NCBI GenBank assembly: GCA_020184695.1
Contig: JAANOX010000117.1
Span: 62,001 to 126,000, forward strand
Direction of reading: 5' to 3'
Source of the DNA: Histomonas meleagridis 2922-C6/04-290x
Taxonomy: Eukaryota > Protista > Parabasalia
DNA length: 64,000 nucleotides
The number at the start of each line of letters is the position of its first letter. The stretch's first letter is position 1. This document shows positions 28,327 to 59,174 of this stretch, piece by piece. The notes below the pieces were generated by a model. It ran no database searches and had not been told where the DNA came from. It saw nothing but the letters and a program-made list of their open reading frames with translations. Made by a program: the position numbers and the translations under genes.

Positions 28327-30486
28327 ATGAATGCTTTCCCAATCATTCCCTTAGTGTCTTCATTTTACTTATATTCAGTATGTTCTTTATTATCAATTTC
28401 AACAATTTTTAAATCCATTTTTAAATCATTATTTTTTTTTATAAATCTTCGATTGATTCTAACTTTATACTACAATTCAAAATATTTACATAACTTATTA
28501 GGTTATTTTCAAAATTCTTCAAATGTTTTATCTTTTTTATTAAAAAAATTTGCAGTGTTTATTTTATTTTGTATCATTAATAATATTTTATCATTGTTAT
28601 TCATTAAAACAAGAAATTATTTAAGAAATTTAAATCGAAATATTTTCAGCAAAGAAAAGTTTAAATTCAGAATTCTTCCATTTTTATTTATTCTTTTTTT
28701 CATTCGATCATTTGAAACATTTGATAATATAACCCAAACACTTATTATATCGAATTCAAATGAATTTGAAAATATTGATTTATATAAAACTCGAACAAAA
28801 TATCTTATAATTAATGGAAGTGTTGAAATAATTACAGATTATGCTTTTTCTAGTTGGTCAAATTTAGTTTCTGTTGAAATTGGCAATTCAGTTACATCAA
28901 TTGGTAATCGTACATTTCTATCATGCTCTAATTTAACAACAGCTATTATTGGAGAAAGTGTTACAACAATTAATGAATATGCATTTTACGGATGTTCCTC
29001 ATTAGAAATAGTTATTATTGGTGAAAATGTCAAAGAAATTTGCAACAACACATTTCGTTCATGTTTTTCATTACGAAACATTACAATTCCAAAGTCAGTT
29101 ACATTAATTGCATCAAATTCTTTTATAAAATGTGAAAATCTCAAAAACTTTACGACAATAATTTGTTATCCATTGGGAATCAAAAATGAAACATTTGAAA
29201 TTCCAAATTCAGTTATAACAATTGGATGTTATGCATTCTATAAATGTTTTTCATTAACAAATGTCATAATTTCAGATTCAGTTATAACAATTGAAGCTTA
29301 CGCATTTTATCATTGTTATTCAATAACAAATATAACAATTCCGAATTCAGTTCAAATAATTGGAAGTCATGCATTTTGTAGATGTACTTCATTAACAAAT
29401 GTAATAATTTTTCATTCAGTTACAACAATTGGAAGTTATGCATTTCAATCATGTTCCAAATTAATAAATATCACAATTCCAGATTCAGTTACTTCAATTG
29501 GCGATGCAGCATTTCAGTCATGTTCCAAATTAATAAATATCACAATCCCAGATTCAGTTACTTCAATTGACTATGCAGCATTTCAATCATGCGATAACTT
29601 GAAAAATATTATAATTGGAAATAGTGTAACAACAATTGGAAGTTCTGCATTTCAATCATGTTCATCATTAGAAACAGTTATCATTGGTGAAAGTGTTACA
29701 ACAATTGAAAGTTATGCATTTCAACACTGCTCTAATCTTACATGTATATATTATAAAGGTTATTCTTCACCAACATTTCAAAATTCAAATGTCTTTGATA
29801 ATATAACAGCAAAATATGTTATGACATCAGATTTATATGAAGACGCAACATTTGGTACACTCGATGTATCTAAAGGCTCATCAATTGAAGGATGTGCACA
29901 ATATCCATGGCCAACACACACATTTACTAAATCAAATACTTTTACTAATACATTTACACAATCAAGTACATTCACTAATACATTTACTAAATCATTTACA
30001 TTTACATTTGAATCTTTAAATAATTATATGACAACATTATCGAATTCAATTATTTTAACGAATTCATTATTTATTACACAAACATTAACATTAAATAATA
30101 TATTTTCAACAAATTCATATTCAATTACAATAAATAATTCGATATTCACATATATTAAGAGTGAAATCTTTTCATATGAATATATAATTTATCAATATTC
30201 TACATATTATTTTTATTATTCTAATTTCTTTACAGTCATTTCATATATTTTTACTGAACGAAAATCTATTTCAAACGAAGTATTAATTGGTATTATATGT
30301 GGCTCGATTGGATTTATTTTATTAATCACTGGAATTATTATATTTGTAATTCACAAAAGTAAAAATGAAATTTCAACATCAACTATGAATATTAAATCTA
30401 AATATTCAACATCAACATGTAAAACGGAACAAATTGATGAAGAATTTAATCAACATATTGTTAATGAAGAAGATCAATGGATATAA
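28327..30486 (+). CDS. BspA-like LRR surface protein, ectodomain A with anchor X
   Basis: TpLRR repeats (VTSIGDAAFQSCSKLINITIPDS), cap, short stalk, TM ILIGIICGSIGFILLITGIIIFVI-type helix, tail ..EEDQWI. Confidence 0.92.
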   Translation: MNAFPIIPLVSSFYLYSVCSLLSISTIFKSIFKSLFFFINLRLILTLYYNSKYLHNLLGYFQNSSNVLSFLLKKFAVFILFCIINNILSLLFIKTRNYLRNLNRNIFSKEKFKFRILPFLFILFFIRSFETFDNITQTLIISNSNEFENIDLYKTRTKYLIINGSVEIITDYAFSSWSNLVSVEIGNSVTSIGNRTFLSCSNLTTAIIGESVTTINEYAFYGCSSLEIVIIGENVKEICNNTFRSCFSLRNITIPKSVTLIASNSFIKCENLKNFTTIICYPLGIKNETFEIPNSVITIGCYAFYKCFSLTNVIISDSVITIEAYAFYHCYSITNITIPNSVQIIGSHAFCRCTSLTNVIIFHSVTTIGSYAFQSCSKLINITIPDSVTSIGDAAFQSCSKLINITIPDSVTSIDYAAFQSCDNLKNIIIGNSVTTIGSSAFQSCSSLETVIIGESVTTIESYAFQHCSNLTCIYYKGYSSPTFQNSNVFDNITAKYVMTSDLYEDATFGTLDVSKGSSIEGCAQYPWPTHTFTKSNTFTNTFTQSSTFTNTFTKSFTFTFESLNNYMTTLSNSIILTNSLFITQTLTLNNIFSTNSYSITINNSIFTYIKSEIFSYEYIIYQYSTYYFYYSNFFTVISYIFTERKSISNEVLIGIICGSIGFILLITGIIIFVIHKSKNEISTSTMNIKSKYSTSTCKTEQIDEEFNQHIVNEEDQWI

Positions 30487-31856
30487 TTCACAGTAAATAT
30501 TTTAAATGAAAAATGAGCAACAATTGTTCATTATCATTACATTGATTATTATTATTAAACGAAAGAAAATTTTGATCGATATTATACTTTCTCCGCTGTT
30601 TTATACAGTTCCAGTTTATTATGAACATTTTTAAATAATTGGCATTTTGGGTAATTCTCATTTTCGAAGTTCAATATCACGAACAGTATAATCCTTTTGC
30701 CAACTTATGTCGACGTAGAGATTCTCATCGTCTAAGGAAATACATAGTATAAACAAATACATCAACAAATTTATAACAACAATTTATTAATTTTTATTAT
30801 TAATGAAAAATCCAAATAATGTAATCAAGAGGTTATTTTACATTGATAACTTTGTGGTTATGATTAACTTTAATCCATTGAATGCATTGTGAACATTGTG
30901 TTTTTAAACTCGGTCCATTACATAAGTCTTTTTGCCATTATCTCTTCGTATGTGATAAACATTCATTGTTTCATCTTTCATTCATTTGATCCATTAAAAC
31001 ACATGAATAAACTTTGGTGATTTCAAAGTTTTAACATCATTACAGTGATAGAAATATATATTAGACCTGTTTCTTGCCCTACAGCATTTACAATGTTCCA
31101 AGTATTTTTGTTCATGTCTTATGAAAATGAAGTTAGTTGACACACAATGTGGTTAACATTATCAAAGATATGACCTAATAAACATGATTACTTCGATAAA
31201 TTTAACTTGCATTTTAACTTGAAAACATTTTGCAACATATAAATTTTCATAAAAAATGGATTAACACATTAAATGAGTTTACATGTGAATTAATTATTAT
31301 TTATTTTAATTTTTTGGTTAAAATACATTAATTCAGAAAAAGCAAAATTAAAATCATGTACTTTAAATTAGATTTGCAACAATCAAACTTAAAGTTCTAA
31401 TGAATTTCTTAAATTTATTTCAAATCCAAAGAATACATGGAAAATAATGATGTTTTAATTTAAACATGGCTTTAAACCGTTCATTCAATGGTTTACATGG
31501 TGCACTTGACGATATTTCAGATGAACCAAAGCCTTTTATATGCAAACCAGCTTGTGTATGCAGGAACAGTAAAGTGCGCCGAAGCAAGACAATTGAAATA
31601 AAAGTGCATTTCCTGTCGTTTTCCCTTGTATATCAAACCGTTTTTTAACGGTTTGTTTGCTAACAAAATTTGAGCGGATATGTGTTTTGTTAAGTTTTTC
31701 TGAGTTTATTTTGTAGCGGCTCTCTTTTTCTTTTGCATGTACAACAGATTTTAAGAAATAAAATTGGGTTTGTAACTTTTTGAATACTTGACTTTCGCCA
31801 AACTTGAAATCTGTGTTTGAAATCGAAAACTTACCTCATTTGAGCTATTCCGAAAT

Positions 31857-33836
31857 ATGGTGTATACGTATTTTATTTTCCATACATTGTTTACGATTAA
31901 TTCAGACCATGTTCACATTTGCTCAAAGTTATTTATACTAAACATTATTTTTTATAATTACTTAAAAAATAGATTATTCAATATTCTACATATTATATTT
32001 AATATCTTTCCGATTTATTTACATTCAACATGCTTTTTGTTATCCCTGATATTTTATTTATCTTGTTTTAAATCAATAATTTCATTTTTAAAACTTCGGT
32101 TGTGTTTTATTTCAGGAGCCCATTTAAAATATTTATGTAATTTATTGGATGAACACTATCTTCTATTTGTTTTATCTTTTTTTCAAAAATTTACAGTGTT
32201 TATTTTATTTTGTATCATTAATAATATTTTATCATTGTTATTCATTAAAACAAGAAATTATTTAAGAAATTTAAATCGAAATATTTTCAGCAAAGAAAAG
32301 TTTAAATTCAGAATTCTTCCATTTTTATTTATTCTTTTTTTCATTCGATCATTTGAAACATTTGATAATATAACCCAAACACTTATTATATCGAATTCAA
32401 ATGAATTTGAAAATATTGATTTATATAAAACTCGAACAAAATATCTTATAATTAATGGAAGTGTTGAAATAATTACAGATTATGCTTTTTCTAGTTGGTC
32501 AAATTTAGTTTCTGTTGAAATTGGCAATTCAGTTACATCAATTGGTGATCATGCATTTCTATCATGCTCTAATTTAACAACAGCTATTATTGGAGAAAGT
32601 GTTACAATAATTAATGAATATGCATTTCACGAATGTTCAATAATAAATATCATAATTCCAGATTCAGTTTATTCAATTGGTGGTTATGCATTTCAATCAT
32701 GTAAATCTTTAGGAACAGTTATCATTGGTGAAAGTGTATCATTTATTGGTATTTATGCATTTCAATACTGCTATAATCTTACATGTATATATTATAAAGG
32801 TTATAGCAAACCAACATTTCAAAATGATTATGTTTTTGATAATATACCAGCAAAATATGTTATGACATCAGATTTATATGAAGATACAACATTTGGTACA
32901 CTCAAAGTATCTAAAGGCTCATCAATTAAAGAATGTGCTCAATATCCATGGCCAACACACACATTCACTAAATCAAATACATTTACTCAATCAAATACAT
33001 TTACAGACACATTCACTAAATCAAACACATTTACTAATTCAAATACATTTACTAATACATTTACTCAATCAAATATATTCACTAAATCAAATACATTTAC
33101 TAAATCAAATACATTTACTCATTCAAATACATTTACTAAATCAAATACTTTTACTAATTCGAATACATTTACTAAAACATTTACTCAATCAAATACATTT
33201 TCTAATTCAAATACATTTACAGACACATTCACTAAATCAAACACATTTACTAATTCAAATACATTTACTAAAACATTTACTCAATCAAATACATTTTCTA
33301 ATTCAAATACATTTACAAATTCGAATACATTTACTAAATCATTTACATTTACATTTGAATCTTTAAATAATTATATGACAACATTATCGAATTCAATTAT
33401 TTTAACGAATTCATTATTTATTACACAAACATTAACATTAAATAATATATTTTCAACAAATTCATATTCAATTACAATAAATAATTCGATATTCACATAT
33501 ATTAAGAGTGAAATCTTTTCATATGAATATATAATTTATCAATATTCTACATATTATTCTTATTATTCTAATTTCTTTACAGTCATTTCATATATTTTTA
33601 TTGAACGAAAATCTATTTCAAACGAAGTATTAATTGGTATTATATGTGGCTCGATTGGATTTATTTTATTAATCACTGGAATTATTATATTTGTAATTCA
33701 TAAGAATCGGAAACAAATTTCAACATCAACACCAAAAGCCATTTCTAATTCATCAACAGATAACAAAAGCCTAACAGAACATGTAGACCAAGAACTCAAT
33801 CAACTTTTTAATAATGAAGAAGATCATTGGATATAA
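31857..33836 (+). CDS. BspA-like LRR surface protein, short A-type ectodomain, long stalk, anchor X
   Basis: Same N-terminal block as 28327, fewer LRRs, about 20 stalk units, TM, tail ..EEDHWI. Confidence 0.92.
   Translation: MVYTYFIFHTLFTINSDHVHICSKLFILNIIFYNYLKNRLFNILHIIFNIFPIYLHSTCFLLSLIFYLSCFKSIISFLKLRLCFISGAHLKYLCNLLDEHYLLFVLSFFQKFTVFILFCIINNILSLLFIKTRNYLRNLNRNIFSKEKFKFRILPFLFILFFIRSFETFDNITQTLIISNSNEFENIDLYKTRTKYLIINGSVEIITDYAFSSWSNLVSVEIGNSVTSIGDHAFLSCSNLTTAIIGESVTIINEYAFHECSIINIIIPDSVYSIGGYAFQSCKSLGTVIIGESVSFIGIYAFQYCYNLTCIYYKGYSKPTFQNDYVFDNIPAKYVMTSDLYEDTTFGTLKVSKGSSIKECAQYPWPTHTFTKSNTFTQSNTFTDTFTKSNTFTNSNTFTNTFTQSNIFTKSNTFTKSNTFTHSNTFTKSNTFTNSNTFTKTFTQSNTFSNSNTFTDTFTKSNTFTNSNTFTKTFTQSNTFSNSNTFTNSNTFTKSFTFTFESLNNYMTTLSNSIILTNSLFITQTLTLNNIFSTNSYSITINNSIFTYIKSEIFSYEYIIYQYSTYYSYYSNFFTVISYIFIERKSISNEVLIGIICGSIGFILLITGIIIFVIHKNRKQISTSTPKAISNSSTDNKSLTEHVDQELNQLFNNEEDHWI
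32960..33340. repeat. 18-bp stalk tandem repeat (T/S-x-S-N-T-F), about 20 units
   Basis: ACTAAATCAAATACATTT-like units. Confidence 0.9.
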
Positions 33837-34182
33837 TATACAGAAAACTAGAGTTCTCAGTTAGGTACAAACCATTTGGCTGAGCCCTCAGCCATAAGTA
33901 AATAATATGTTGCATAAGATTGAATTGCTTGGCGAAGCAGACATGCCAAAGCCAACAACTCTCTTTTTATGAATACTTTTTTAAATAATTGTGATTCGTT
34001 GGAAATATATTTTCTGAGAGAAAAAAGTAACACTGTAATGATATCATCGTTTAATATAATTTACAGAAAACTTATGCGATGTTCAACGTGTATAATATTT
34101 TGTAATTTCATAATTTTTTGTTTTCTGAAATGTATAAATTTGTAAAATAAAAAAATTGGTATCTAAAAAACAGTTTATACAT

Positions 34183-36678: not shown

Positions 36679-36980
36679 TTATTTGTGGACGTTTATAATT
36701 CCATACGAAAACGTTCTCCAAGTAAATCGTATGAAACTAATTAAAATTGAAGGTGTATGAAGTCGAATTTTCAAAATACTACTACGTAGTTACCTATTTA
36801 CAGAAATAGATAGTGTGATAGTTCAAATAATCAAACAAATTCAAATCATAATATTATGATTTAATTTTTTGATCGAAAATCAATAAAAATATTTCATACT
36901 AAAACATAAAGAAACATAAGGATAAAAAAAGTATTCATAAAATTTTGAGAAATTCGATTAATGTTTAGAAATGTATTTTT

Positions 36981-37334
36981 TTAGTCAATCTCTTTGACAA
37001 CATAATCACCATAATCAATTTGAACTTTCGAACCAGATGGAAAGTCCATGATGACAGTATTAATGAGTCTTTCATCCTTGACTTTTTGAGGTTCTTTATA
37101 ATTTCCATGATTTGTTTTTTCGTAGTCTTCCTTTCTTTTAGCAATGAATTTTTCCTTTTTTTCAATATCCTTTTTTAGCTTTTTAGCTTCTTTTTGAAGT
37201 TTTGATATTTCTTGCTTGTTTTCATCTTCTAATCTTACTAAATCTTTCTTCTTTTCCTCAATCCTAGCTGCAAGTTCTTTGATTTTTTCATCATTGTTCT
37301 TGATGATTTCTGCATATTTCTCGGCATCCGTCAT
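36981..37334 (-). CDS. Small coiled-coil hypothetical protein (117 aa from ATG 37334)
   Basis: K/E-rich heptads. The track start at 37454 overlaps the neighbouring gene, so the internal ATG is preferred. Confidence 0.6.
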   Translation of the reverse strand: MTDAEKYAEIIKNNDEKIKELAARIEEKKKDLVRLEDENKQEISKLQKEAKKLKKDIEKKEKFIAKRKEDYEKTNHGNYKEPQKVKDERLINTVIMDFPSGSKVQIDYGDYVVKEID

Positions 37335-37438
37335 TTCGAAAATATTTGTCAATACTGTTTTCTCACAAAAAGCTACTGTCATTTTTTTGGGAAGTGAACA
37401 GAATAAACGGGCGAAAATAAACGTCCATTGAGTTACTA

Positions 37439-41221: not shown

Positions 41222-43699
41222 TTATATCCATTGATCTGCTTCATTGTTGATAAATTCATTGATTTCTTTGTTAACATGCTCTGTGTTATTCGTTGATGAT
41301 TTTGATATTACTTTCGTAGTTGATGTTGAAATTTCATTTTTACTTCTGCGAATTACAAATATAATAATTCCAGTGATTAATAAAATAAATCCAATCGAGC
41401 CACATATAATACCAATTAATACTTCGTTTGAAATAGATTTTCGTTCAGGAAAAATATATGAAATGACTGTAAAGAAATTAGAATAATAAAAATAATAATA
41501 TGTAGAATATTGATAAATTATATATTCATATGAAAAGATTTCACTCTTAATATATGTGAATATCGAATTATTTATTGTAATTGAATATGAATTTGTTGAA
41601 AATATATTATTTAATGTTAATGTTTGTGTAATAAATAATGAATTCGTTAAAATAATTGAATTCGATAATGTTGTCATATAATTATTTAAAGATTCAAATG
41701 TAAATGTAAATGATTTAGTAAATGTATTCGAATTTGTAAATGTATTTGAATTAGAAAATGTATTTGATTGAGTAAATGTTTTAGTAAATGTATTTGATTT
41801 GGTGAATGTGTGTGTTGGCCATGGATATTGTGCACATCCTTCAATTGATGAGCCTTTAGATACATCGAGTGTACCAAATGTTGTATCATAATATAAATCT
41901 GATGTCATAACATATTTTGCTGGGACACCTTCAAAGACATAATCATTTTGAAATGTTGGTGAAGAATAACCTTTAAAATATATACATTTAAGATTAGAAC
42001 ATGATTGAAATGCAGAACTTCCAATTGTTGTTACATTATTACCAATGATAACTGTTTCCAAATTTTCACATGTTTGAAATACAAAATTTCCAATTGTTGT
42101 AACTGAATCTGGAATTGTGACATTCGTTAATTTTGTTGAAAAAAATGCAAATGTATAAATACTTTTAACATTATTACCAATAATAACTATTTCTAAATTA
42201 GAACAATATTGAAATGCACTAATACCAATCGTAATAACTGAATCTGAAATGATAACATTTTTGATTAAAGAACTTTTTTGAAATGCATATTTCCCAATAG
42301 TAATAACTGTGTTTGGAAGTTCAAATGTTTCATTAGATTTTCCTGATGGATAACAAAGTATTGTTGTAATACTTTTATCATAAAGAACTCCATCACATTC
42401 TGAATAATATTCATTTTCTTTCGATACGTCAATAAATTGAAGACTTGGACATTGTGCAAAAGCAGCTTCTCCAATTGAAGTTACTGATTTCGGAATTGTA
42501 ATATTAGATAATCTTTCGCAAGATTCAAATGCATTGTTCCCAATTTCTTCAACATTTTCTCCAAGTTGAACTGTAATTAAAGAACTACATGTTTGAAATG
42601 CACTAATACCAATCGTAATAACTGAATCTGAAATGATAACATTTTTGATTAAAGAACTTTTTTGAAATGCATATTTCCCAATAGTAATAACTGTGTTTGG
42701 AAGTTCAAATGTTTCGTTCGATCTTCCTGATGGATAACAAAGTATTGTTGTAATGTTTTTATCATAAAGAACTCCATCACATTCTGAATAATATTCATTT
42801 TCTTTCGATACGTCAATAAATTGAAGAATTATACATTGTGCAAAAGCAGCTTCTCCAATTGAAGTCACTGACTTAGGAATTGTAATATTAGATAATCTTT
42901 CACAAGATTCAAATGCATTGTTCCCGATTTCTTCAACACTTTCTCCAATGTAAACTGCTTCAATTGCATAACAATGATAAAATGCTCGATCTCCAATCGT
43001 TTTAACTGTTTCACTAATTTCAACTGAAATTAATGAAGACCATTCAGAGAATGCACTACTTTCAATCGTTTCAATACCTGAAATAATAAGATGTTTTGTT
43101 TTAGTTTGATATAAATATCTTTTTTCATATTCATTCATATTAGTTATATTCAATGTTTGTGTTGTATTATCAAATATTTCATTTGAAAATGTTAAAAAGA
43201 AAAAAAATAAAAAATAAAAAAATTTTTGAGAAATAATTTGAGAAATAATATTTGTTGAAAAAAAATTCATTTTAACAAATAGTAAAATGAAAATAAAAAT
43301 AAGAAATATTGGAGAATTAAAAAAGAATGAAAAATGTTTTGTTACAAATTGAAATGAGAATTCTCTACTTGCATTATAAAAAAAACCATTTTTATTTAAT
43401 AAAAATATTGAAAGTGTGTAATTTCTAGATTGGAAATTTGTTAAATTATCAACTAATTTAAAATTGTTAAGTATTGAATCAAAAGAAATAAGATGAGAAT
43501 AACAGTTGAAAAATAAGCCGAAATTTCTTGTTTCAGTTAATATTGGATAATTAATACCATTCGTATAAAGTTTATCTACATATTTTGATTTTTGAAAAAA
43601 CATATTTTTTGGCAATGATGTAAAAAAGGATAAAATGCGTACATGCACTAGAAAAATAAGATAGTAGCTCATAAAATTAAAATATTTCCATGGAGACAT
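41222..43699 (-). CDS. BspA-like LRR surface protein, ectodomain B with anchor X
   Basis: Internally duplicated LRR block (VSKENEYYSECDGVLYDK twice), cap, stalk, TM, tail ..EADQWI. Confidence 0.92.
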   Translation of the reverse strand: MSPWKYFNFMSYYLIFLVHVRILSFFTSLPKNMFFQKSKYVDKLYTNGINYPILTETRNFGLFFNCYSHLISFDSILNNFKLVDNLTNFQSRNYTLSIFLLNKNGFFYNASREFSFQFVTKHFSFFFNSPIFLIFIFILLFVKMNFFSTNIISQIISQKFFYFLFFFFLTFSNEIFDNTTQTLNITNMNEYEKRYLYQTKTKHLIISGIETIESSAFSEWSSLISVEISETVKTIGDRAFYHCYAIEAVYIGESVEEIGNNAFESCERLSNITIPKSVTSIGEAAFAQCIILQFIDVSKENEYYSECDGVLYDKNITTILCYPSGRSNETFELPNTVITIGKYAFQKSSLIKNVIISDSVITIGISAFQTCSSLITVQLGENVEEIGNNAFESCERLSNITIPKSVTSIGEAAFAQCPSLQFIDVSKENEYYSECDGVLYDKSITTILCYPSGKSNETFELPNTVITIGKYAFQKSSLIKNVIISDSVITIGISAFQYCSNLEIVIIGNNVKSIYTFAFFSTKLTNVTIPDSVTTIGNFVFQTCENLETVIIGNNVTTIGSSAFQSCSNLKCIYFKGYSSPTFQNDYVFEGVPAKYVMTSDLYYDTTFGTLDVSKGSSIEGCAQYPWPTHTFTKSNTFTKTFTQSNTFSNSNTFTNSNTFTKSFTFTFESLNNYMTTLSNSIILTNSLFITQTLTLNNIFSTNSYSITINNSIFTYIKSEIFSYEYIIYQYSTYYYFYYSNFFTVISYIFPERKSISNEVLIGIICGSIGFILLITGIIIFVIRRSKNEISTSTTKVISKSSTNNTEHVNKEINEFINNEADQWI
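41738..43400. repeat. About 1.7-kb near-identical direct repeat, partner at about 45211-46890
   Basis: Constant offset of 3473 nt checked at 41741, 42068 and 42781. Identity starts inside the stalk repeat. Confidence 0.9.
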
Positions 43700-44164: not shown

Positions 44165-44198
<34 letters not shown>

Positions 44199-44586
44199 AA
44201 ATAATATCAAAAAATACGTTATCTAATAACAGGCAATTTTAATTAATTTTAAAGTTATCAATTTCAACATTACTCCAAATTACCAGAAAAGTATTATGAC
44301 ATTCAAGTATTATATCAGATTTAACAGAAGATATAAGAAAATTATATATTGTTTTTTTTTCTCTTTAACCCAAAAAAGCCAAATTCCTGTTAAAGTATTA
44401 TTATAAAATCAAACATTAAACATAAAGATTCAAAAGACGATATACCAAAACAATTTCATCTTTAAACAAAATCTAAAATTAGCGCATGTTTTGATGTGTT
44501 AGTTCGATAGATATTATTGTTCATTAATTCATTTCTTGAATCAAATAATTGAAAAATTTATACTAAAAAACATTTATTTATTTATA

Positions 44587-47236
44587 TCATAAATGATTAA
44601 TAATATTTTCTTCTTCAAAGTCTTTAGCAAATGGATCTTCTTCAACATATGAAAGATTATTACATATTTCGAATTTGTTTGAAATTTCATTTCCATTTCC
44701 ATTTTCATTTTGTTCATTATTACTGTTCATTTCGTTCTTATTTTTTTGGTTATTTCGTTGATGAATTAAAATGATAATAATAACAATAATTATAATTATG
44801 ATAATAATGATTATACTAACAATGATAATAATAATATAAATTTGATTTTCGTTATTATTATCATTAAATTCATTCGTAAAATAAATTATAAAATTCGTAT
44901 AAAAACTAATTTTCGAATAATATTTAATGATCGTATATTCATAATATATAAAATTACTATAAGTAATAATATATGTTAAATTAGAATATGAAAAATAAAT
45001 CGAATTCGATAAAAATGAATAATTTATTATATAACTTTCGACAAAAGAATATGTGAAAAGTAAAGTTTTTGTGAAATATCCATTCGATATATAACTTTGT
45101 AATGATATTATTGATCTGGTAAAACTATTCAAATTAGAAAATGAATTCGATTTGGTAAATATATTTGATTGAGTAAATGTATTTGAATTAGAAAAAGTAT
45201 TTGATTTAGTAAATGTATTTGAATTAGAAAATGTATTTGATTGAGTAAATGTTTTAGTAAATGTATTTGATTTGGTGAATGTGTGTGTTGGCCATGGATA
45301 TTGTGCACATCCTTCAATTGATGAGCCTTTAGATACATCGAGTGTACCAAATGTTGTATCATAATATAAATCTGATGTCATAACATATTTTGCTGGGACA
45401 CCTTCAAAGACATAATCATTTTGAAATGTTGGTGAAGAATAACCTTTAAAATATATACATTTAAGATTAGAACATGATTGAAATGCAGAACTTCCAATTG
45501 TTGTTACATTATTACCAATGATAACTGTTTCCAAATTTTCACATGTTTGAAATACAAAATTTCCAATTGTTGTAACTGAATCTGGAATTGTGACATTCGT
45601 TAATTTTGTTGAAAAAAATGCAAATGTATAAATACTTTTAACATTATTACCAATAATAACTATTTCTAAATTAGAACAATATTGAAATGCACTAATACCA
45701 ATCGTAATAACTGAATCTGAAATGATAACATTTTTGATTAAAGAACTTTTTTGAAATGCATATTTCCCAATAGTAATAACTGTGTTTGGAAGTTCAAATG
45801 TTTCATTAGATTTTCCTGATGGATAACATAGAATTGTTGTAATACTTTTATCATAAAGAACTCCATCACATTCTGAATAATATTCATTTTCTTTCGATAC
45901 GTCAATAAATTGAAGACTTGGACATTGTGCAAAAGCAGCTTCTCCAATTGAAGTTACTGATTTCGGAATTGTAATATTAGATAATCTTTCGCAAGATTCA
46001 AATGCATTGTTCCCAATTTCTTCAACATTTTCTCCAAGTTGAACTGTAATTAAAGAACTACATGTTTGAAATGCACTAATACCAATCGTAATAACTGAAT
46101 CTGAAATGATAACATTTTTGATTAAAGAACTTTTTTGAAATGCATATTTCCCAATAGTAATAACTGTGTTTGGAAGTTCAAATGTTTCGTTCGATCTTCC
46201 TGATGGATAACAAAGTATTGTTGTAATGTTTTTATCATAAAGAACTCCATCACATTCTGAATAATATTCATTTTTCTTTTCGATACGTCAATAAATTGAA
46301 GAATTATACATTGTGCAAAAGCAGCTTCTCCAATTGAAGTCACTGACTTAGGAATTGTAATATTAGATAATCTTTCACAAGATTCAAATGCATTGTTCCC
46401 GATTTCTTCAACACTTTCTCCAATGTAAACTGCTTCAATTGCATAACAATGATAAAATGCTCGATCTCCAATCGTTTTAACTGTTTCACTAATTTCAACT
46501 GAAATTAATGAAGACCATTCAGAGAATGCACTACTTTTCAATCGTTTCAATACCTGAAATAATAAGATGTTTTGTTTTTAGTTTTGATATAAATATCTTT
46601 TTTTTCATATTCATTCATATTAGTTATATTCAATGTTTGTGTTGTATTATCAAATATTTCATTTGAAAATGTTAAAAAGAAAAAAAATAAAAAATAAAAA
46701 AATTTTTGAGAAATAATTTGAGAAATAATTTTTTTATTTGTTGAAAAAAAATTCATTTTAACAAATAGTAAAATGAAAATAAAAATAAGAAATATTGGAG
46801 AATTAAAAAAGAATGAAAAATGTTTTGTTACAAATTGAAATGAGAATTCTCTACTTGCATTATAAGAAAAATCATTTTTATTTAATAAAAATATTGAAAA
46901 TATGTGTTTTTTAGATTGGAAATTTGTTGAAATATCAATTAACTTAAAATGTTTGTCAAAAAAACTTGGATAATAATCATATTTGATAAATAAATTAAAA
47001 TCTCCTGCTTCGTGTAGTCTCTGATAATTTAGATTGTTCTCCTTTATTTTTGCGTTTAAAAGTTTTGATTTTTGGTGAAACATATTCTTTGAAATTGATA
47101 AAGCAAAAAACAAAACGTATGTGTGTGCACACATTGAAAACAAAAGAGTGAAATATTTCATACCAAATGACTGACAAATAGAAGTTTGAAGAAGATGAAA
47201 TGCAAAACCAATATCGTTTTCACTTTTCGAATACAA
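44587..47236 (-). CDS. BspA-like LRR surface protein, ectodomain B with anchor Y (apparent frameshifts at 46270-46610; first ATG at 47161)
   Basis: Ectodomain nearly identical to 41222-43699. Frame is intact from 46260 to the stop. Extra bases sit only in homopolymer runs. Poly-Ile TM, tail EEDPFAKDFEEENIINHL. Confidence 0.75.
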
Positions 47237-47815: not shown

Positions 47816-49016
47816 TTATAAATGTTTAATCATCAACATACATCTACAAAATGCATGAGTTCCAATTATTTGAACTGAATTCGGAATTGTTATATTTGTT
47901 ATTGAATAACAATGATAAAATGCGTAATCTTCAATTGTTATAACTGAATCTGAAATTATTACATTTGTTAATGAAAAACATTTATAGAATGCATAACATC
48001 CAATTGTTATAACTGAATTTGGAATTTCAAATGTTTCATTTTTGATTCCCAATGGATAACAAATTATTGTCGTAAAGTTTTTGTTATATAGAATTCCATT
48101 ATTACTATTGGAGTAATTATCATTTTCATCAGATACATTAAAAAATTGAAGATTTTCACATTTTATAAAAGAATTTGATGTAATTAATGTAACTGACTTT
48201 GGAATTGTAATGTTTCGTAATGAAGAACATGAACGAAATGTTTTGTTGCAAATTTCTTTGACATTTTCACCAATAATAACTATTTCTAATGAGGAACATC
48301 CGTAAAATGCATATTCATTAATTGTTGTAACACTTTCTCCAATAATAGCTGTTGTTAAATTAGAGCATGATAGAAATGTACGATTACCAATTGTTGTAAC
48401 TGAATTGCCAATTTCAACAGAAACTAAATTTGACCAATTAGAAAAAGCATAATCTGCAATTATTTCAACACTTCCATTAATTATAAGATATTTTGTTCGA
48501 GTTTTATATGAATTAATATTTTCAAATTCATTTGAATTCGATATAATAAGTGTTTGAGTTATATTATCAAATGTTTCAAATGATTGAATGAAAAAAAGAA
48601 TAAATAAAAATGGAAGAATTCTGAATTTAACCTTTTCTTTGCTGAAAATATTTCGATTTAAATTTCTTAAATAATTTCTTATTTTGATGATACAAAATAA
48701 AATAAACACTGTAAATTTTTGAAAAAAAGATAAAACATTAGAATAATTCTGTAAAAAATCTAAATAATTATACAAATGTTTTAAATTTGTATTTGAAATA
48801 AAACATTCTTGAAGTTTTAAAATAGAATATTTTGATTTAAAAGTAGATAAAAAAATTGTTGAGACCGACAAAAATGAATATATTAAACATGAATAAAATG
48901 AAAAAGCATGAAAAATAGTATGGAATATAAAATAATATATCCGTAGAAAATCGATCAATAAGGACTTTCAAAAATGAGTGGTTGTATGTTAGAAGCAAAG
49001 TGCGAGTCGGAATCAT
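47816..49016 (-). pseudogene. Truncated A-type BspA copy (no cap, stalk or TM; leader frameshifted after ATG 49016)
   Basis: Paralogous to 56817-59174 up to AFCRC, then unrelated sequence and a stop. The ATG 49016 frame is offset from the LRR frame. Confidence 0.8.
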
Positions 49017-52596: not shown

Positions 52597-53536
52597 TTGG
52601 AAACAAAATTATTGTTGTTAACCTGCTGATGCACAAAATTGTTGGGAACCGTTAAAAGATTTTATGGTTCTTTCACCTCATGTTTTAAACGGTCGCGAAT
52701 CACAAAAAAGTAAATTCAATTACAAACTTTTTCAGAGAAGGGTCAATAATTATCAACATGTTGATAATTAATATTGAAATCATTCAATATCTTTAATTAA
52801 TATTGAAGTTTCTTGTTGATAATTAATATTAAAATTATTTAATATCTTTCATTTTATTTGTGTTTTGTCATTTATTTAAAATAAATATAAATGATAAATG
52901 AAATGGTTCATTGATATAATCATATGAATATGTAACAATATTAAAGAATTCTAAGTAAAAAGTAAAGTTAATAATATATGATGTTGATGATGATACAATA
53001 CAATGAATCAAAATATTAATATTAAACATAAATTCCTATTCACGTAAAGAAACACTATGATCATTTATAATCTTTGATAGAGAAAAAGAGAAATTCTGAA
53101 ATATTTGATACAATTAACCATAACAAGTCATTGAATTTCAAGTGAATAAAATTTTATTAACAACAAATCTTTACAGCTTTCGAATGAACTTTCATTATAT
53201 TATTTAAAAGTGTCTTTAAAAGCATTTTATTCTTGTGATTTACTTGTACACTTTAAATATTGATTAAAAGATTCGATGATTGAATTAAAAAAAATTCAAG
53301 AAAACAATAGGCCAATTATCTTATAACCGTGTGAATTTTAACTTTTGTATAGGCCGATGTGTATTTGGTAAAGGTCTTCAATTATATTTCATCTTGAAAA
53401 ATGAAAATCCTTCAAATTCTTCTCATTTTGCAGGTCTCAAAGCAATTTATAACTCATATGAATCTTAAATCTTCATTTTTCAAACATATAAAATTTTTAC
53501 ATATACCAAAAAGCAGGAACAAAGAAGAACTTGCTC

Positions 53537-55288
53537 ATGCACACAACGTGGATGATCCAATCTTTGAAACCATCATCAAAAAAAAAATTAATTTTAAGCA
53601 ATATATCCACAGAGCTCACCAAATGTCATTTTGATGCAAAATTCATCTTAAACAATATACTTGCGATGCCAATGAACCATGTTTTAACCCCCAAACAAAA
53701 ACTTTTCGAATCAGATTTTACAAATTCTCATGAACAATCAAGTGAAATCAATACATTTGATCAATGTATCCTTCCTCTACAAATATTGGATCGATATTAT
53801 GAATATGTATCATTATTACATTGGAAATTTTGTTTTTCTTTTTTGATGCACAACGTCAACAATTTTGAATCAGTTGCATTCAATTGTTTACTTCACATTA
53901 ACACAATTTTTTCAATGCTGTTGATAGCGGTTTGTATCAAATTTTTTCAGAAAAATTCAATGGTTCAGAAAGAAGTTTATCAAAAAGATGATGAAATGAA
54001 AACAAAAGATAACAAAAACGAAAATATTTTTGTATATGTTTTTGTTCTTTTTTTCATGAATTCTTATCAAATAATTTTCAATTATGATAACTCAACGCTT
54101 TTAATCGAAAATGATAATGATTTTAATAATATAAATTCTTATGCAAATATAACTGAAAATATTATTATTGGTGAAAATATTACTATAATTCCGGGTAACG
54201 CTTTTATTGAATGGCCAATAGTTTGTGTTAATTTTAGTAATTCAGTAACAAACATTGGGTCCGCAGCATTTTTAAATTGTTATAATTTGACAATTTTGAC
54301 ATTTGGCACAGGATTAACAAGTTTTGGAGATAATTCATTTGCAAACTGTATATCACTAATAAATATTACAATTCCAAATTCAGTAACAAACATTGGATCC
54401 TCAGCATTTTCATGTTGTTATGGGTTAAAGATATTAACACTTGGCACAGGATTATCAGTGATTGCAAATGGTGCATTTTCGCAATGTTATAATCTTCAAT
54501 GTATTTATTTTTATGGTATTTCACGACCATGGATTGGAGAAAGTGCATTTTTTTCAGTTAACGCAACAGTTCTTACATATCCAACATATGATGATGAAAG
54601 ATTTGGTCCATTTACAGTGAATGATTATGAAGGAGGAGTCTGCATACCATCGTTTACACATTCATTTTCAAGTTCAAATACATATACACAATCAAACACA
54701 TATACACAATGAAACACATATATTCAATCAAACTCATTCAGTAAATCATATACATTCACTAGGTCGAATACATTTATAAAATCACTTCAAAGTTATTTAA
54801 CTTTATCATTTTCTTATATAATAACCATTTCAGTATCTATTACTCATTCATTAACGATTTATGAAACGCAAATAAAATCATTTTCATTATTTTTAAGTAA
54901 TTCAATGTTTTCATATATTGAAACTAAATTTATTTATTATGATTACACAATTGTTATTTATACAACATATTATAATTATTATTCAAATTTCTATACATAT
55001 ATTAATATAAATGAATTCCTCAATAATGATAATAATATCACGACAATTATTATTATTGTTTGTGTTGTTATTATAATTATAATTATTATAACACTACTTG
55101 TCGTATTATTGATTCGAATTCGAAACAAAAAATCAGAAAATATTAAAAACGAAAGTTCAGAAGAAAATGAAAATAAAAACAAAAAAGAAACCACGAATAC
55201 ATTTGCAACAGGAATTTCTATATCAACAATTGAAGAAGATCCTTTTGCTGATGATTTCAAAGAAGATAAATTTATTGTGCAAATGTAA
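53537..55288 (+). CDS. BspA-like LRR surface protein (subfamily C) with one in-frame TGA at 54710-54712
   Basis: Frame is continuous on both sides of the TGA (64 sense codons to ATG 54905, then TM and EEDPFADDFKE tail). It may be a pseudogene. Confidence 0.7.
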
Positions 55289-56816
55289 TTTTGTTTAAAC
55301 ATAAAAAAGCAATAAAAGAAATATATGCGATATTAAAGCCATTTTCTATTTTTAGAATAAACATTAAATTTCTTTTAGATATGTTTTTATGTCATTAATT
55401 TTAATTTCAATAAAAAGAAATGCATTTTAAAAAACACTGAAAGAATAAAAAAAATTGCGTTTCTTTTTTTCTTGTAATGATTAGAAATATTTGATTCATA
55501 GTTAGACATAACATTACATTTAGGAATAGAATTATCAACCTAATGAAATGAATACAATAAAAGGAAATAAATTTGTTTACATGTTTTGTTTTTTTATTAT
55601 AGACATTTTTCGACAATGTTGAAAAATAACACAATAAGCATGTGTAAGTTAAATGAAAAAAGAATGCATCAGTTCATGAAATCAAAAGTGTTTCATGCAA
55701 ACATGCAAAGAGGAAATTAACAATTATGATACAACATATTTGATGAAAATAAAACCAACAAAAGTTACCTGGTATTTATGTAAATATATCAAAAAGTTTC
55801 AAAACCTCGAAAATTTCTTCATCAGCCACACCTTGACAAATGATTTTCAGCAATTAATTTTCATGGAATGTATTCACCTGTTGTCAAGAGTTTAACTCCT
55901 GAACTTTTTTATGAATTTATCCCACATAAGATTTTTATAATGTGTTAAAAATTTAAACTTCAATTTCAAACATGACTTAGTCTAAGTATCTTTTACTCTT
56001 AATTTATTTATCAGTGTGAAAATCAAATTTTTTGATTTTTGGTGAACAATAAATTGAATCATCGAATAGAAGTAAACGAAAAGTTCAAATTTAAATTCTT
56101 ATTTTTTTAAAAAATTTATGATATATAAGCGGATTAAAACTGTCTATCTCACGAAAACTCTTTACGAATATAAACTTAATGTGCTTATCATTTTGCATTT
56201 TCACTAAATTCTGATTTTTTTAGAAGGCATTTTACGTTGTTTGAAAACTTGTTTCTATAAATAGAAATATATTATATTATCCTAATTTAATGAATTTTTA
56301 AATTCAGAACAAATCATCAATGCTTTATGCTCCAAAGCAAATTTCATTCCAACTAGGATGGTGACACCATCACGGTGTGATCGAATATTTGAAAAAATAT
56401 GATTTGTAATATTGATTTTTTATGTGAAAATTTTTGTTGTATTCATAAAAAACATTAAAATGTACATAGAATATGTGATTAATCTTTTATTTTTGGGACT
56501 AACCACAAAAAACTTCAAAATGTTTGATGCATTTTTCATGTTTAATTTCAACAATCGACATTTTATTTAATGATTGGAATATCATCCTTTAATTATTAAT
56601 AAAACTTGTTGATATAAGATATATTTTTTTTTAATTATTTGTATGGTTTTTAATATTTGACAATGTACTTATTATGGTATTTTTAATCGAAAAAATATAT
56701 TACCGAAATTATTACATCTTTTGATGTGTTAGTTCGATAGATATTATTATTCATTAACCCATTTCTTGAATTAAATAAATAAAAAATTAATACAAAAAAG
56801 CATTTATTCATTTATA

Positions 56817-59174
56817 TCATAAATGATTAATAATATTTTCTTCTTCAAAATCTTTAGCAAATGGATCTTCTTCAACATATGAAAGATTATTACATATTTC
56901 GAATTTGTTTGAAATTTCATTTCCATTTCCATTTTCATTTTGTTCATTATTACTGTTCATTTCGTTCTTATGGTTATTTCGTTGATGAATTAAAATGATA
57001 ATAATAACAATAATTATAATTATGATAATAATGATTATACTAACAATGATAATAATAATATAAATTTGATTTTCGTTATTATTATCATTAAATTCATTCG
57101 TAAAATAAATTATAAAATTCGTATAAAAACTAATTTTCGAATAATATTTAATGATCGTATATTCATAATATATAAAATTATTATAAGTAATAATATATGT
57201 TAAATTAGAATATGAAAAATAAATCGAATTCGATAAAAATGATTTATTTATTATATAACTTTCGACAAAAGAATATGTGAAAAGTAAAGTTTTTGTGAAA
57301 TATCCATTCGATATATAACTTTGTAATGATATTGTTGATCTGGTAAAAGTATTCAAATTAGAAAATGAATTCGATTTGGTAAATGTATTTGATTGAGTAA
57401 ATAAATTTGATTTAGTGAATGTATTTGATTTTGTAAATGTATTCGATTTAGTGAATGTGTGTGTTGGCCATTGATATTGTGCACATCCTTCAATTGATGA
57501 GCCTTTAGATACATCGAGTGTACCAAATGTTGCGTCTTCATATAAATCTGATGTCATAACATATTTTGCTGTTATATTATCAAAGACATTTGAATTTTGA
57601 AATGTTGGTGAAGAATAACCTTTATAATATATACATGTAAGATTAGAGCAGTGTTGAAATGCATAACTTCCAATTCTTGATACACTTTCACCAATGATAA
57701 CTGTTCCTAAAGATTTACATAATTCAAATGCAGAACTTCCAATTGTTGTTACACTATTTCCAATTATAATATTTTTCAAGTTATCGCATGATTGAAATGC
57801 TGCATAGTCAATTGAAGTAACTGAATCTGGGATTGTAATATTTATTAATTTGGAACATGACTGAAATGCTGCATCGCCAATTGAAGTAACTGAATCTGGA
57901 ATTGTGATATTTATTAATTTGGAACATGATTGAAATGCATAACTTCCAATTGTTGTAACTGAATGAAAAATTATTACATTTGTTAATGAAGTACATCTAC
58001 AAAATGCATGACTTCCAATTATTTGAACTGAATTCGGAATTGTTATATTTGTTATTGAATGACAATGATAAAATGCGTAATCTTCAATTGTTATAACTGA
58101 ATCTGAAATTATTACATATGTAAATGAAAAACATTTATAGAATGCATAACATCCAATTGTTATAACTGAATTTGGAATTTCAAATGTTTCATTTTTGATT
58201 CCCAATGGATAACAAATAATTGTCGTAAAGTTTTTGTTATATAGAATTCCATTATTACTATTTGAGAAATTATCATTTTCATCAGATACATTAAAAAATT
58301 GAAGATTTTCACATTTTATAAAAGAATTTGATGTAATTAATGTAACTGACTTTGGAATTGTAATGTTTCGTAATGAAGAACATGAACGAAATGTGTTGTT
58401 GCAAATTTCTTTGACATTTTCACCAATAATAACTATTTCTAATGAGGAACATTCGTAAAATACAAATTCATTAATTGCTGTAACACTTTCTCCAATAGTG
58501 GCTGTTGTTAAATTAGAGCATGATAGAAATGTACGATTACCAATTGATGTAACTGAATTGCCAATTTCAACAGAAACTAAATTTGACCAACTAGAAAAAG
58601 CATTATCTGCAATTATTTCAACACTTCCATTAATTATAAGATATTTTGTTCGAGTTTTATATAAATCAATATTTTCAAATTCATTTGAATTCGATATAAT
58701 AAGTGTTTGGGTTATATTATCAAATGTTTCAAATGATTGAATGAAAAAAAGAACAAATAAAAATGGAAGAATTCTGAATTTAAACTTTTCTTTGCTGAAA
58801 ATATTTCGATTTAAATTTCTTAAATAATTTCTTATTTTGATGATACAAAATAAAATAAACACTGTAAATTTTTGAAAAAAAGATAAAACATAAGAATAAT
58901 TCTGTATAAAATCTAAATAATTATACAAATGTTTTAAATTTGTATTTGAAATAAGACATTCTTGAAGTTTTAAAATAGAATATTTTGAGATAAAAGTAGA
59001 TAAAAAAATTGTTGAGATCGACAAAAATGAATATATTAAACATAAATAAAATGAAAAAGCATGAAAAATAGTATGGTAAATATAATGTGATATATTCTTA
59101 AAAAATTGATCAAAAATAAGGACTTTCAAACATGGGTGGTTGTATATTAGAAGCAAAGCGTGAGTCGGAATCAT
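56817..59174 (-). CDS. BspA-like LRR surface protein, ectodomain A with anchor Y
   Basis: LRRs nearly identical to 28327. Anchor, tail and about 100 nt of 3' flank match 44587. Confidence 0.92.
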   Translation of the reverse strand: MIPTHALLLIYNHPCLKVLIFDQFFKNISHYIYHTIFHAFSFYLCLIYSFLSISTIFLSTFISKYSILKLQECLISNTNLKHLYNYLDFIQNYSYVLSFFQKFTVFILFCIIKIRNYLRNLNRNIFSKEKFKFRILPFLFVLFFIQSFETFDNITQTLIISNSNEFENIDLYKTRTKYLIINGSVEIIADNAFSSWSNLVSVEIGNSVTSIGNRTFLSCSNLTTATIGESVTAINEFVFYECSSLEIVIIGENVKEICNNTFRSCSSLRNITIPKSVTLITSNSFIKCENLQFFNVSDENDNFSNSNNGILYNKNFTTIICYPLGIKNETFEIPNSVITIGCYAFYKCFSFTYVIISDSVITIEDYAFYHCHSITNITIPNSVQIIGSHAFCRCTSLTNVIIFHSVTTIGSYAFQSCSKLINITIPDSVTSIGDAAFQSCSKLINITIPDSVTSIDYAAFQSCDNLKNIIIGNSVTTIGSSAFELCKSLGTVIIGESVSRIGSYAFQHCSNLTCIYYKGYSSPTFQNSNVFDNITAKYVMTSDLYEDATFGTLDVSKGSSIEGCAQYQWPTHTFTKSNTFTKSNTFTKSNLFTQSNTFTKSNSFSNLNTFTRSTISLQSYISNGYFTKTLLFTYSFVESYIINKSFLSNSIYFSYSNLTYIITYNNFIYYEYTIIKYYSKISFYTNFIIYFTNEFNDNNNENQIYIIIIIVSIIIIIIIIIIVIIIILIHQRNNHKNEMNSNNEQNENGNGNEISNKFEICNNLSYVEEDPFAKDFEEENIINHL

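What the first reader, a model, noticed from the sequence alone, without database searches (positions are those of the whole stretch)
28327..59174. Complete 2x2 combinatorial set of BspA ectodomains and membrane anchors, joined in the stalk repeat
Seen: A+X (28327), A+Y (56817), B+X (41222) and B+Y (44587-47236). Ectodomains A and B are each nearly identical between their two copies. Anchors X (FTFESLNNY..GIICGSIG..) and Y (SLQSYISNG..poly-Ile..EEDPFAKDF, with about 100 nt shared 3' flank) are likewise shared crosswise. In every comparison identity switches inside the 18-bp xSNTFT repeat. Established: BspA is a large trichomonad surface family with varied tails. Inference: the stalk repeat is a recombination hinge that re-assorts binding domains with trafficking or signalling tails, a possible surface-diversification system.
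Basis: partly seen in the sequence, partly recalled or inferred. Interest (0 to 1): 0.75.

Follow-up and report, generated by a model that had tools for sequence, protein, structure and literature searches.

The report
Mosaic BspA surface genes in Histomonas
A cluster of surface-protein genes in the poultry parasite Histomonas meleagridis has swapped outer binding domains and membrane anchors by recombination at or next to a short repeat between them, a process already known from yeast adhesins but not yet described for this gene family.

Summary
The four combinations are real. A+X is at 28327-30486, A+Y at 56817-59174, B+X at 41222-43699 and B+Y at 44587-47236. Identity switches from 97-100% to about 58% inside the xSNTFT stalk repeat for both B genes. 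For both A genes it switches in the stalk or the 66 invariant bases before it (Fisher p 1e-73 to 1e-111).

Three corrections apply:
- B+Y is not an intact frame in this assembly.
- "Anchor X" is shared only through the juxtamembrane and transmembrane parts (about 99%). The cytoplasmic tails are about 74% identical, so there is a second switch after the membrane span.
- The cluster holds more mosaic members (31857-33836, 47816-48958, fragment 12948-13220) and tract ends outside the stalk.

The genome is the attenuated H. meleagridis assembly. Across 43-49 paralogs, tail class is scattered at random on the ectodomain tree but clustered on the juxtamembrane tree. The same stalk-anchor cassette also carries fimbrillin-like ectodomains. 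That breaks fall specifically in the stalk genome-wide is only weakly supported.

The best reading is ordinary non-allelic recombination and gene conversion among paralogs, as in yeast FLO/ALS adhesins. Nothing points to a programmed switching system. I could not test for chimeric assembly.

The parts
28327..30486 (+). G1, the A+X gene. Its leader and first LRR are 100% identical to G2, its A ectodomain is 97-100% identical to G5/G6, its X juxtamembrane+TM is 99-100% identical to G2/G3, and its cytoplasmic tail is its own.
29911..30000 (+). G1 stalk (PTHTFT... repeat of 15/18-nt units). The A|X switch interval is 29845-29906, with mixed sites up to about 30000.
30001..30348 (+). X juxtamembrane+TM tract of G1. 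The matching tracts are G2 33348-33695 and G3 41354-41704, at 98.3-99.4% identity. Identity falls to 69-74% in the tail that follows.
31857..33836 (+). G2, a further mosaic member. It has a G1-like leader and first LRR (32168-32638), a short distinct LRR block, a cap, a 396-nt stalk (32952-33347, about 23 units), the X juxtamembrane+TM tract, and its own tail.
41222..43699 (-). G3, the B+X gene. It is intact. Its leader is shared with a partial B copy on contig C144, so it is the donor-like context for the B tract.
41705..41818 (-). G3 stalk. The B|X switch lies between 41755 and 41723; against G2 it lies between 41801 and 41735.
44587..47236 (-). G4, the B+Y gene. Its leader is its own and diverged. 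Its B tract (46953-45173) is near-identical to G3. Its Y juxtamembrane+TM+tail and 111 nt of 3' flank (45234-44476) match G6. The reading frame is broken by A-run length differences between 46277 and 46735.
45106..45291 (-). G4 stalk. The B|Y switch lies between 45220 and 45205.
47816..48958 (-). G5, a truncated A gene. The upstream region plus the first ~1.1 kb of A is 93-100% identical to G1/G6. Homology ends at 47839-47895 inside the LRRs. An 885-nt stretch unique in the genome (46954-47838) follows.
56817..59174 (-). G6, the A+Y gene. It is intact. It carries a small patch in the last LRRs (about 57730) that matches G2 rather than G1.
57330..57467 (-). G6 stalk. The A|Y switch interval is 57533-57453.
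12948..13220 (+). Orphan fragment of a last LRR plus cap (88% to the cluster genes). Its homology stops in the first stalk unit ('...WPTHTFT', then unrelated sequence).

Best explanation
**What it is.** This is a 31-kb birth-and-death cluster of BspA-like surface-protein genes in Histomonas meleagridis. Each gene has the same layout:
- a leader;
- an LRR_5 ectodomain;
- a conserved cap (CIYxKG...PWPTHTFT);
- a stalk of xSNTFT repeats (15/18-nt units);
- a beta-rich juxtamembrane segment;
- one transmembrane helix;
- an acidic tail, either X (ends ..DQW[IL]) or Y (..EEDPFAxDF..).

**How the mosaics arose (inferred).** Non-allelic homologous recombination (gene conversion or unequal crossing-over) between neighbouring paralogs has copied tracts of 0.3-1.7 kb from one gene into another.

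**Why the stalk (inferred).** All paralogs share the invariant end of the cap and the repeat, which offers many registers of microhomology. One end of many tracts therefore falls there. This yields every combination of ectodomain A or B with anchor block X or Y, and also varies stalk length (90 to 396 nt).

**Limits of the 'hinge' idea.** Other tract ends fall in the leader, inside the LRRs, just after the membrane span and in the 3' flank. The stalk is a favoured joint, not an exclusive one.

**Shown versus inferred.**
- Shown: the mosaic structure, the breakpoint intervals and the genome-wide incongruence of ectodomain and anchor.
- Inferred: the recombination mechanism, its direction (B moved from the G3 context into G4) and any functional consequence of changing the anchor.
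For: **Family.** LRR_5 is found at E 1e-27 to 1e-90 in all members.

**Local mosaic.**
- Cap identity is 99-100% within A and within B, and 89-91% across.
- Juxtamembrane+TM identity is 98-99% within X and within Y, and 58-60% across.
- Informative-site tests for one breakpoint per gene give Fisher p 4e-73 to 3e-111, with intervals in or abutting the stalk.
- The 90-nt window map shows about 15 tract ends, 5 of them in stalks that make up 7% of the sequence (binomial p about 0.003). An orphan fragment also ends in the first stalk unit.
- The C144 partial B copy shares G3's leader and G3's A-run lengths.

**Genome-wide.**
- On 49 paralogs, tail class needs 12 changes on the cap+LRR tree (shuffled labels average 12.5) but 3 on the juxtamembrane tree (0 of 500 shuffles reach this low).
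- The AU test rejects a single X clade on the ectodomain tree, with the cluster genes (p 0.0003) and without them (p 0.007).
- Between diverged paralogs the stalk gives the longest exact shared runs (median 14 nt against 9-11 nt elsewhere).
- The same stalk+anchor cassette sits on Mfa_like_1 fimbrillin-like ectodomains and on Pfam-negative ectodomains.
Against: - The number of independent stalk events in the cluster may be as low as two or three, so the local enrichment test overstates independence.
- Genome-wide, distance correlations fall across the stalk (C-J 0.13-0.23 against U1-C 0.36-0.43). The difference is not significant without the cluster genes (95% CI -0.08 to 0.33). Uniform, distance-dependent loss of linkage is therefore not excluded.
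- The sample of paralogs was drawn partly by similarity to these anchors, and X-class genes are few (14).
- One row (L074) later proved not to be a BspA gene.
- No independent assembly or read-level check of the junctions was possible.
Confidence: 0.8

Rival explanations
1. The stalk repeat is a selected, dedicated recombination hinge. On this reading H. meleagridis uses it as a built-in plug-in site to re-assort ectodomains, including ones of bacterial type, with alternative anchor or trafficking modules. That would amount to a true surface-diversification system.
For: - All five full-length cluster genes, plus one fragment, have a junction at the stalk.
- At least three kinds of ectodomain share the cassette.
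- Ectodomain and anchor histories are incongruent genome-wide.
- Linkage drops across the stalk in the expected direction.
Against: - Most tract ends lie elsewhere.
- In the X genes the tail is not part of the exchanged block.
- The X and Y tails align and share the acidic D-[PQ]-[FW] core, so the functional contrast may be small.
- The cluster contains broken and truncated copies.
- The two strain assemblies, separated by long in-vitro passage, are reported colinear without rearrangements within contigs.
- The genome-wide hotspot test is not significant.
Confidence: 0.12
2. The pattern is an assembly or polishing artefact. The four junctions, or the near-identity of the shared tracts, would come from chimeric joins at repeats in the Flye ONT assembly, or from racon polishing with Illumina reads mis-mapped between paralogs.
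For: - The assembly is ONT/Flye with three rounds of racon on short reads.
- G4 differs from G3 almost only by extra bases in A-runs, with hardly any substitutions, which looks like uncorrected homopolymer error.
- 100% identical tracts could be partly homogenised by polishing.
Against: - The shared tracts are only 0.3-1.7 kb and each gene has unique flanks within 1-3 kb, well within single long reads.
- Sequence shared at a junction is only about 60-250 nt at about 90% identity, too little for an overlap join (my own knowledge of assembler overlap limits, not tested here).
- Polishing cannot turn 58% identity into 99%.
- Paralog tracts keep copy-specific differences of 0.2-4%.
- The paper reports colinearity of two independently assembled strains.
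Confidence: 0.06
3. No recombination occurred. The genes are plain duplicates whose anchors, or ectodomains, diverged quickly under selection.
For: None beyond the fact that surface proteins often evolve fast.
Against: - All four haplotype combinations are present.
- Identity jumps from 99% to 58% within a few tens of bases.
- The X-like and Y-like modules each have more than 150 homologs elsewhere in the genome, so they are old, separate lineages.
Confidence: 0.01

Closest known systems
Yeast FLO / ALS / IFF-HYR adhesin genes (Verstrepen et al. 2004, 2005; PMC8712946)
   Same: - The layout is the same: an N-terminal binding domain, a Ser/Thr-rich tandem-repeat stalk and a C-terminal anchor.
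- Repeat copy number varies between paralogs.
- Recombinant genes place the binding domain of one gene, or of another family, on the stalk of another.
   Different: - The organism (a parabasalid) and the protein families (BspA LRR_5, Mfa-like) differ.
- The anchor is a transmembrane helix with a cytoplasmic tail, not GPI or cell wall.
- The repeat units are much shorter (15/18 nt).
- No recombination event has been observed directly here.
Trichomonas vaginalis BspA-like family (TvBspA; PMC2843621, PMC6701047)
   Same: - The ectodomains are LRR_5/TpLRR.
- Subsets carry one TM helix and conserved cytoplasmic tails.
- One TvBspA tail group carries [DE]D[PS]FA, which the Y tail (EEDPFA) matches.
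- Tails are shared between BspA and Pmp families.
- Recombination from pseudogene reservoirs was suggested as an idea.
   Different: - Those papers report no mapped ectodomain/anchor exchange, stalk repeat or breakpoints.
- The xSNTFT stalk and the juxtamembrane block seen here gave no hit in the word search of 5.8 billion proteins.
- The ten best profile hits looked up were H. meleagridis proteins or short unnamed metagenome contigs.
Mosaic surface-gene families of parasites (Plasmodium var, Trypanosoma VSG, Giardia VSP)
   Same: Large paralog families have a variable ectodomain on a conserved C-terminal part, and ectopic recombination creates chimeras.
   Different: Those systems have mutually exclusive expression and, for VSG, dedicated expression sites and flanking repeats. 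None of that is known or seen here.

Membership tests
BspA-like (TpLRR / Pfam LRR_5) surface proteins of parabasalids | LRR_5 (PF13306) repeats above Pfam's gathering score | tested here: met
   One search gives 94-298 bits against a cut-off of 27.7 for G1, G2, G3, G5 and G6. G4 is 99.8% identical to G3 over the B tract.
BspA-like (TpLRR / Pfam LRR_5) surface proteins of parabasalids | Single C-terminal transmembrane helix with a short cytoplasmic tail (the TMD-CT subset) | tested here: met
   There is a 24-residue hydrophobic span before a 43-59 residue tail. AF2 predicts a helix at residues 100-129 with pLDDT about 90.
BspA-like (TpLRR / Pfam LRR_5) surface proteins of parabasalids | Cell-surface location and a role in adhesion | not testable with these tools
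   This is known only from literature on T. vaginalis and Tetratrichomonas (PMC6701047).
Tandem-repeat-mediated adhesin recombination (FLO/ALS type) | In-frame tandem repeats between the binding domain and the anchor, with copy number varying among paralogs | tested here: met
   TRF finds period 18 with 2.9 to 23.4 copies. Stalks are 90, 114, 138, 186 and 396 nt long.
Tandem-repeat-mediated adhesin recombination (FLO/ALS type) | Chimeric paralogs whose junctions lie in the repeats | tested here: met
   In one search, G3 and G4 junctions are strictly inside the stalk. G1 and G6 junctions are within the stalk or the 66 nt before it.
Tandem-repeat-mediated adhesin recombination (FLO/ALS type) | Breakpoints enriched in the repeats relative to the rest of the gene | tested here: inconclusive
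   Locally, 5 of 15 tract ends fall in 7% of the length (p about 0.003, events not independent). Genome-wide, the drop in linkage across the stalk is not significant.
Tandem-repeat-mediated adhesin recombination (FLO/ALS type) | New recombinants arising at measurable frequency | not testable with these tools
   This needs clones, passages or isolates.
Programmed antigenic-variation systems (VSG, var, pilE/pilS type) | An expression site with a silent donor archive, exclusive expression and frequent switching | not tested
   No expression data are available. The paper reports colinear virulent and attenuated assemblies, which argues against fast switching but is not a test of this locus.

The most novel reading that the evidence does not exclude
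The xSNTFT stalk, together with the invariant end of the cap, is a selected universal joint. Through it H. meleagridis fuses any ectodomain (BspA LRR, fimbrillin-like and other bacterial-type domains) to a common juxtamembrane-TM-tail display cassette and keeps re-assorting them. The 2x2 set here would then be a snapshot of an active combinatorial surface repertoire.
Probability: 0.2. Interest if true: 0.65.

Novelty: new member of a known kind. Interest (0 to 1): 0.45.

Why it matters
Histomonosis currently has no treatment or prophylaxis (PMC8529796), and BspA-like proteins are leading candidates for adhesion and virulence. Three consequences follow.

- **Family analysis.** If ectodomains and anchors have separate histories, family trees, orthology calls, typing schemes and antigen choices built on whole proteins will mislead. 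Ectodomain and anchor need to be analysed apart.
- **Domestication of bacterial-type domains.** The shared stalk-anchor cassette on LRR, fimbrillin-like and other ectodomains gives a concrete picture of how bacterial-type surface domains were adapted for display on a eukaryotic membrane.
- **Wider relevance.** The cluster is a clean, dated example of repeat-associated recombination outside fungi. It may explain the 'varied tails' long noted in trichomonad BspA families.

Tried and rejected
- **Whole-protein word search with A+Y.** It was swamped by long bacterial LRR_5 proteins and returned no Histomonas relatives. The same search limited to the Y anchor found nothing at E 1e-5.
- **Exact look-ups of the cluster proteins.** Nothing was on record, not even the CLASP control, so the virulent-strain assembly could not serve as an independent check of the junctions.
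- **Fetching more paralogs.** The X class is therefore under-sampled (14 genes).
- **AF2 model of juxtamembrane+TM+tail.** Mean pLDDT was 63. Only the TM helix is confident, and the long beta hairpin is not. I made no fold search and rest no claim on the model.
- **Idea that G4's frame breaks came from the C144 copy.** Rejected: G4 carries none of that copy's substitutions.
- **Mis-called BspA gene.** The regex for the cap mis-called L074 as BspA. It has no LRR_5. It was left out but is present.
- **Distance-correlation test for a stalk-specific break.** The direction is as predicted, but the result is not significant once the cluster genes are removed.
- **Pfam scan of NCBI-named 'bacterial Ig-like' and 'DUF5057' proteins carrying the cassette.** There were no hits at 1e-5, so those names are quoted only as the source's own.
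Full report
**Identity of the sequence**

The window is G000:C117:62001-126000 of a 43,133,364-base, 281-contig genome. These figures equal, to the base, those given for the attenuated Histomonas meleagridis strain in Table 1 of PMC8529796. That assembly was made with ONT reads and Flye, then three rounds of racon with Illumina reads. The window is AT-rich and carries eukaryotic genes such as a CLASP/TOG protein at 34183-36678.

**Check of the observation**

Pfam LRR_5 (BspA-type) is found far above threshold in the ORFs at these positions:
- 28327-30486 (G1, A+X)
- 31857-33836 (G2)
- 41222-43699 (G3, B+X)
- 47816-48958 (G5)
- 56817-59174 (G6, A+Y)
- 53531-54712 (G7)

The B+Y gene (G4, 44587-47236) is split into three ORFs in this assembly.

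Window self-comparison and a 90-nt window map show which tracts are shared:
- A copies are 97-100% alike, apart from a 63-66 nt indel.
- B copies differ by about three real substitutions in 1640 nt.
- Y is shared by G4 and G6 through the stop codon and 111 nt beyond it, ending at 44476/56706.

Segment by segment, nucleotide identity is as follows.

| Segment | Within type | Across types |
|---|---|---|
| Cap | 99.4% (A), 100% (B) | 89-91% |
| Juxtamembrane+TM | 98.3-99.4% (G1, G2, G3), 99.1% (G4, G6) | 58-60% |
| Cytoplasmic tail | 96% (Y genes), 69-74% (X genes) | |

The 3' flanks of the X genes are unrelated. "Anchor X" is therefore a shared juxtamembrane+TM block on three different tails.

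**Breakpoints**

I took each gene as a child of two parents and used only informative sites. One breakpoint explains the data with Fisher p from 4e-73 to 3e-111.

| Gene | Switch | Interval | Position relative to the stalk |
|---|---|---|---|
| G3 | B to X | 41755-41723 | inside |
| G4 | B to Y | 45220-45205 | inside |
| G1 | A to X | 29845-29906 | last 66 nt of cap, up to the stalk start |
| G6 | A to Y | 57533-57453 | last 66 nt of cap plus first 14 nt of stalk |

For G1 and G6 the last 66 nt of the cap are invariant in all genes, so there are no informative sites there.

Tandem Repeats Finder gives period 18 (or 30 = 18+12) with 2.9 to 23.4 copies. Stalk lengths are 90, 396, 114, 186 and 138 nt.

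An orphan cap fragment at 12948-13220 reads '...WPTHTFT' and then turns into unrelated sequence. This is one more break in the first stalk unit.

**The stalk is not the only joint**

The map shows tract ends elsewhere:
- in the leader (about 28540, 28605, 43380-43470, 49100);
- inside the LRRs (about 28960, 47839-47895, a patch near 57730);
- just after the membrane span (about 30330, 33650, 41380);
- in the 3' flank (44476).

Counting about 15 ends, 5 lie in stalks that make up 7.2% of the sequence. The binomial p is about 0.003, or 0.013 if the invariant cap end is added to the target. These ends are not independent events. The different ages of the tracts (B and X 0-1% diverged, A and Y 1-4%) require at least two exchanges, but possibly not many more.

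**Direction of one event**

A partial third B copy on contig C144 (89% identical) shares G3's leader and G3's A-run lengths. G4 has its own diverged leader and an 885-nt upstream stretch unique in the genome. The B tract therefore most likely moved from a G3-like context into G4.

G4's frame breaks are all extra bases in A-runs within 46277-46735, with almost no substitutions nearby. That pattern fits unpolished homopolymer error in a near-identical paralog at least as well as real decay. I leave this open.

**Genome-wide picture**

Searches of the genome with the X and Y modules each returned the full 150 scored hits at 31-57% identity outside this cluster. In 56 distinct genes from the fetched loci the layout is the same throughout: cap, xSNTFT stalk, a juxtamembrane segment with the motif FIYYEYT..YS.YY.FYSNFFT, one TM helix, and one of two tails.

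- X has the TM motif LIGIICGS and ends in ..DQW[IL].
- Y has a poly-Ile/Val TM and carries ..EEDPFAxDF...

The two tails align on an acidic D-[PQ]-[FW] core. The Y motif matches the [DE]D[PS]FA tail group of T. vaginalis BspA (PMC2843621). DP[FW] is known to me as an AP-2 appendage-binding motif; that link is inference only.

Tree tests of tail class against ectodomain and juxtamembrane histories:

| Gene set | Changes on cap+last-LRR tree | Changes on juxtamembrane tree (80 aa) | AU test of one X clade on the cap+LRR tree |
|---|---|---|---|
| 49 genes | 12 (shuffled mean 12.5) | 3 (0 of 500 shuffles as low) | not run |
| 21 genes found with the whole protein as query, less biased | 8 (shuffled mean 7.1) | 2 (0 of 500) | p 0.0003 |
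| 43 genes, cluster genes removed | 8 (shuffled mean 10.0) | 2 (0 of 500) | p 0.007 |

Ectodomain and anchor thus have different histories across the family.

Whether the break is specifically at the stalk is less clear. Rank correlations of pairwise distances between segments are:
- within the ectodomain: 0.26-0.43;
- juxtamembrane against TM+tail: 0.41;
- across the stalk: -0.05 to 0.13.

Without the cluster genes the contrast shrinks (0.31-0.36 against 0.23), and only one of three bootstrap contrasts excludes zero.

Between diverged paralogs the stalk offers the longest exact shared runs. The median is 14 nt against 9-11 nt in other segments, and runs of at least 20 nt occur in 11% of pairs against 0-4%.

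**The cassette serves other families**

Genes at L033, L035, L041 and L042 carry the same stalk, juxtamembrane block, TM and Y tail. Two of them have a fimbrillin-like ectodomain (Mfa_like_1, E 2e-24 and 5e-21). L074 has a Pfam-negative ectodomain.

A profile search of 1.84 billion representatives found 70 proteins at E 1e-10 or better. I looked up the ten best. Eight were H. meleagridis proteins, each on record from two contigs. NCBI names them leucine-rich repeat, bacterial Ig-like, DUF5057 or hypothetical proteins. The other two come from short metagenome contigs. On the juxtamembrane+TM tree the fimbrillin-like genes sit next to the Y anchors of this cluster (support 87).

**Interpretation**

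The best-supported account is non-allelic recombination and gene conversion among clustered paralogs, with the invariant cap end and the repeat acting as the preferred shared homology. This is the process described for yeast FLO, ALS and IFF/HYR adhesins, where a binding domain from one gene ends up on the repeat stalk of another (PMC8712946).

The papers found on trichomonad BspA do not report mapped ectodomain/anchor exchange. The 2010 paper only suggests recombination as a possibility.

I found no sign of a programmed system. The cluster contains truncated and frame-broken copies, including G7 and G8, which are both broken inside the stalk. The two published strain assemblies are reported colinear.

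A chimeric assembly is unlikely, given tract lengths of 0.3-1.7 kb and unique flanks. It could not be tested here.

**Verdict**

The recombination reading is largely right. The 'hinge' is a favoured but not exclusive joint, and the 'diversification system' is unproven. This is a new example, in a new organism and gene family, of a known kind of process.

Noticed in passing
window 13438-15175 (-) and 53730-55466 (+): An inverted 1.75-kb duplicate pair (96%) of another BspA gene with a Y-type anchor (G8 and G7). In both copies the reading frame changes inside the stalk: the ORF ends '...SSNTYTQSNTYTQ' and the anchor continues in another frame.
   Followed up: partly
window 28327-28715, 43270-43699, 46954-47236, 58730-59174: The BspA genes have 125-180 open codons of T-rich 'leader' upstream of the signal-like segment. 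The A genes have no ATG next to that segment. The G3 and G4 leaders are homologous but only about 55-60% identical.
   Followed up: partly
window 42209-42948 (also 45682-46423): The B ectodomain contains an internal tandem duplication of 384 nt (1.9 copies, 96% identical), about five LRR units, present in both G3 and G4.
   Followed up: no
L058 = G000:C144:141815-145629: A third, partial B-type copy lies on another contig: leader plus the first ~830 nt, 89% identical to G3. It ends in unrelated sequence within the LRRs.
   Followed up: partly
G000, e.g. C34:563313/565829, C75:43819/46429, C280:438171/440788, C126:623912/626562 (lists): At more than 20 places in the genome an X-anchored gene of about 563-571 aa is followed about 2.1-2.6 kb downstream, on the same strand, by a Y-anchored gene. 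This looks like a dispersed two-gene unit.
   Followed up: no
L035:1498-3039 (-), L041:280-1989 (+): Fimbrillin-like (Mfa_like_1, a Bacteroidales fimbrial family) ectodomains are fused to the eukaryotic stalk-TM-tail cassette. This may be another bacterial-type surface domain in this parasite.
   Followed up: partly
window 7964-12808 (-): A 1614-aa ORF has no Pfam hit at E 0.01. From memory, its N-terminus resembles the chorein-type start of VPS13/ATG2-like lipid-transfer proteins. This was not tested.
   Followed up: no
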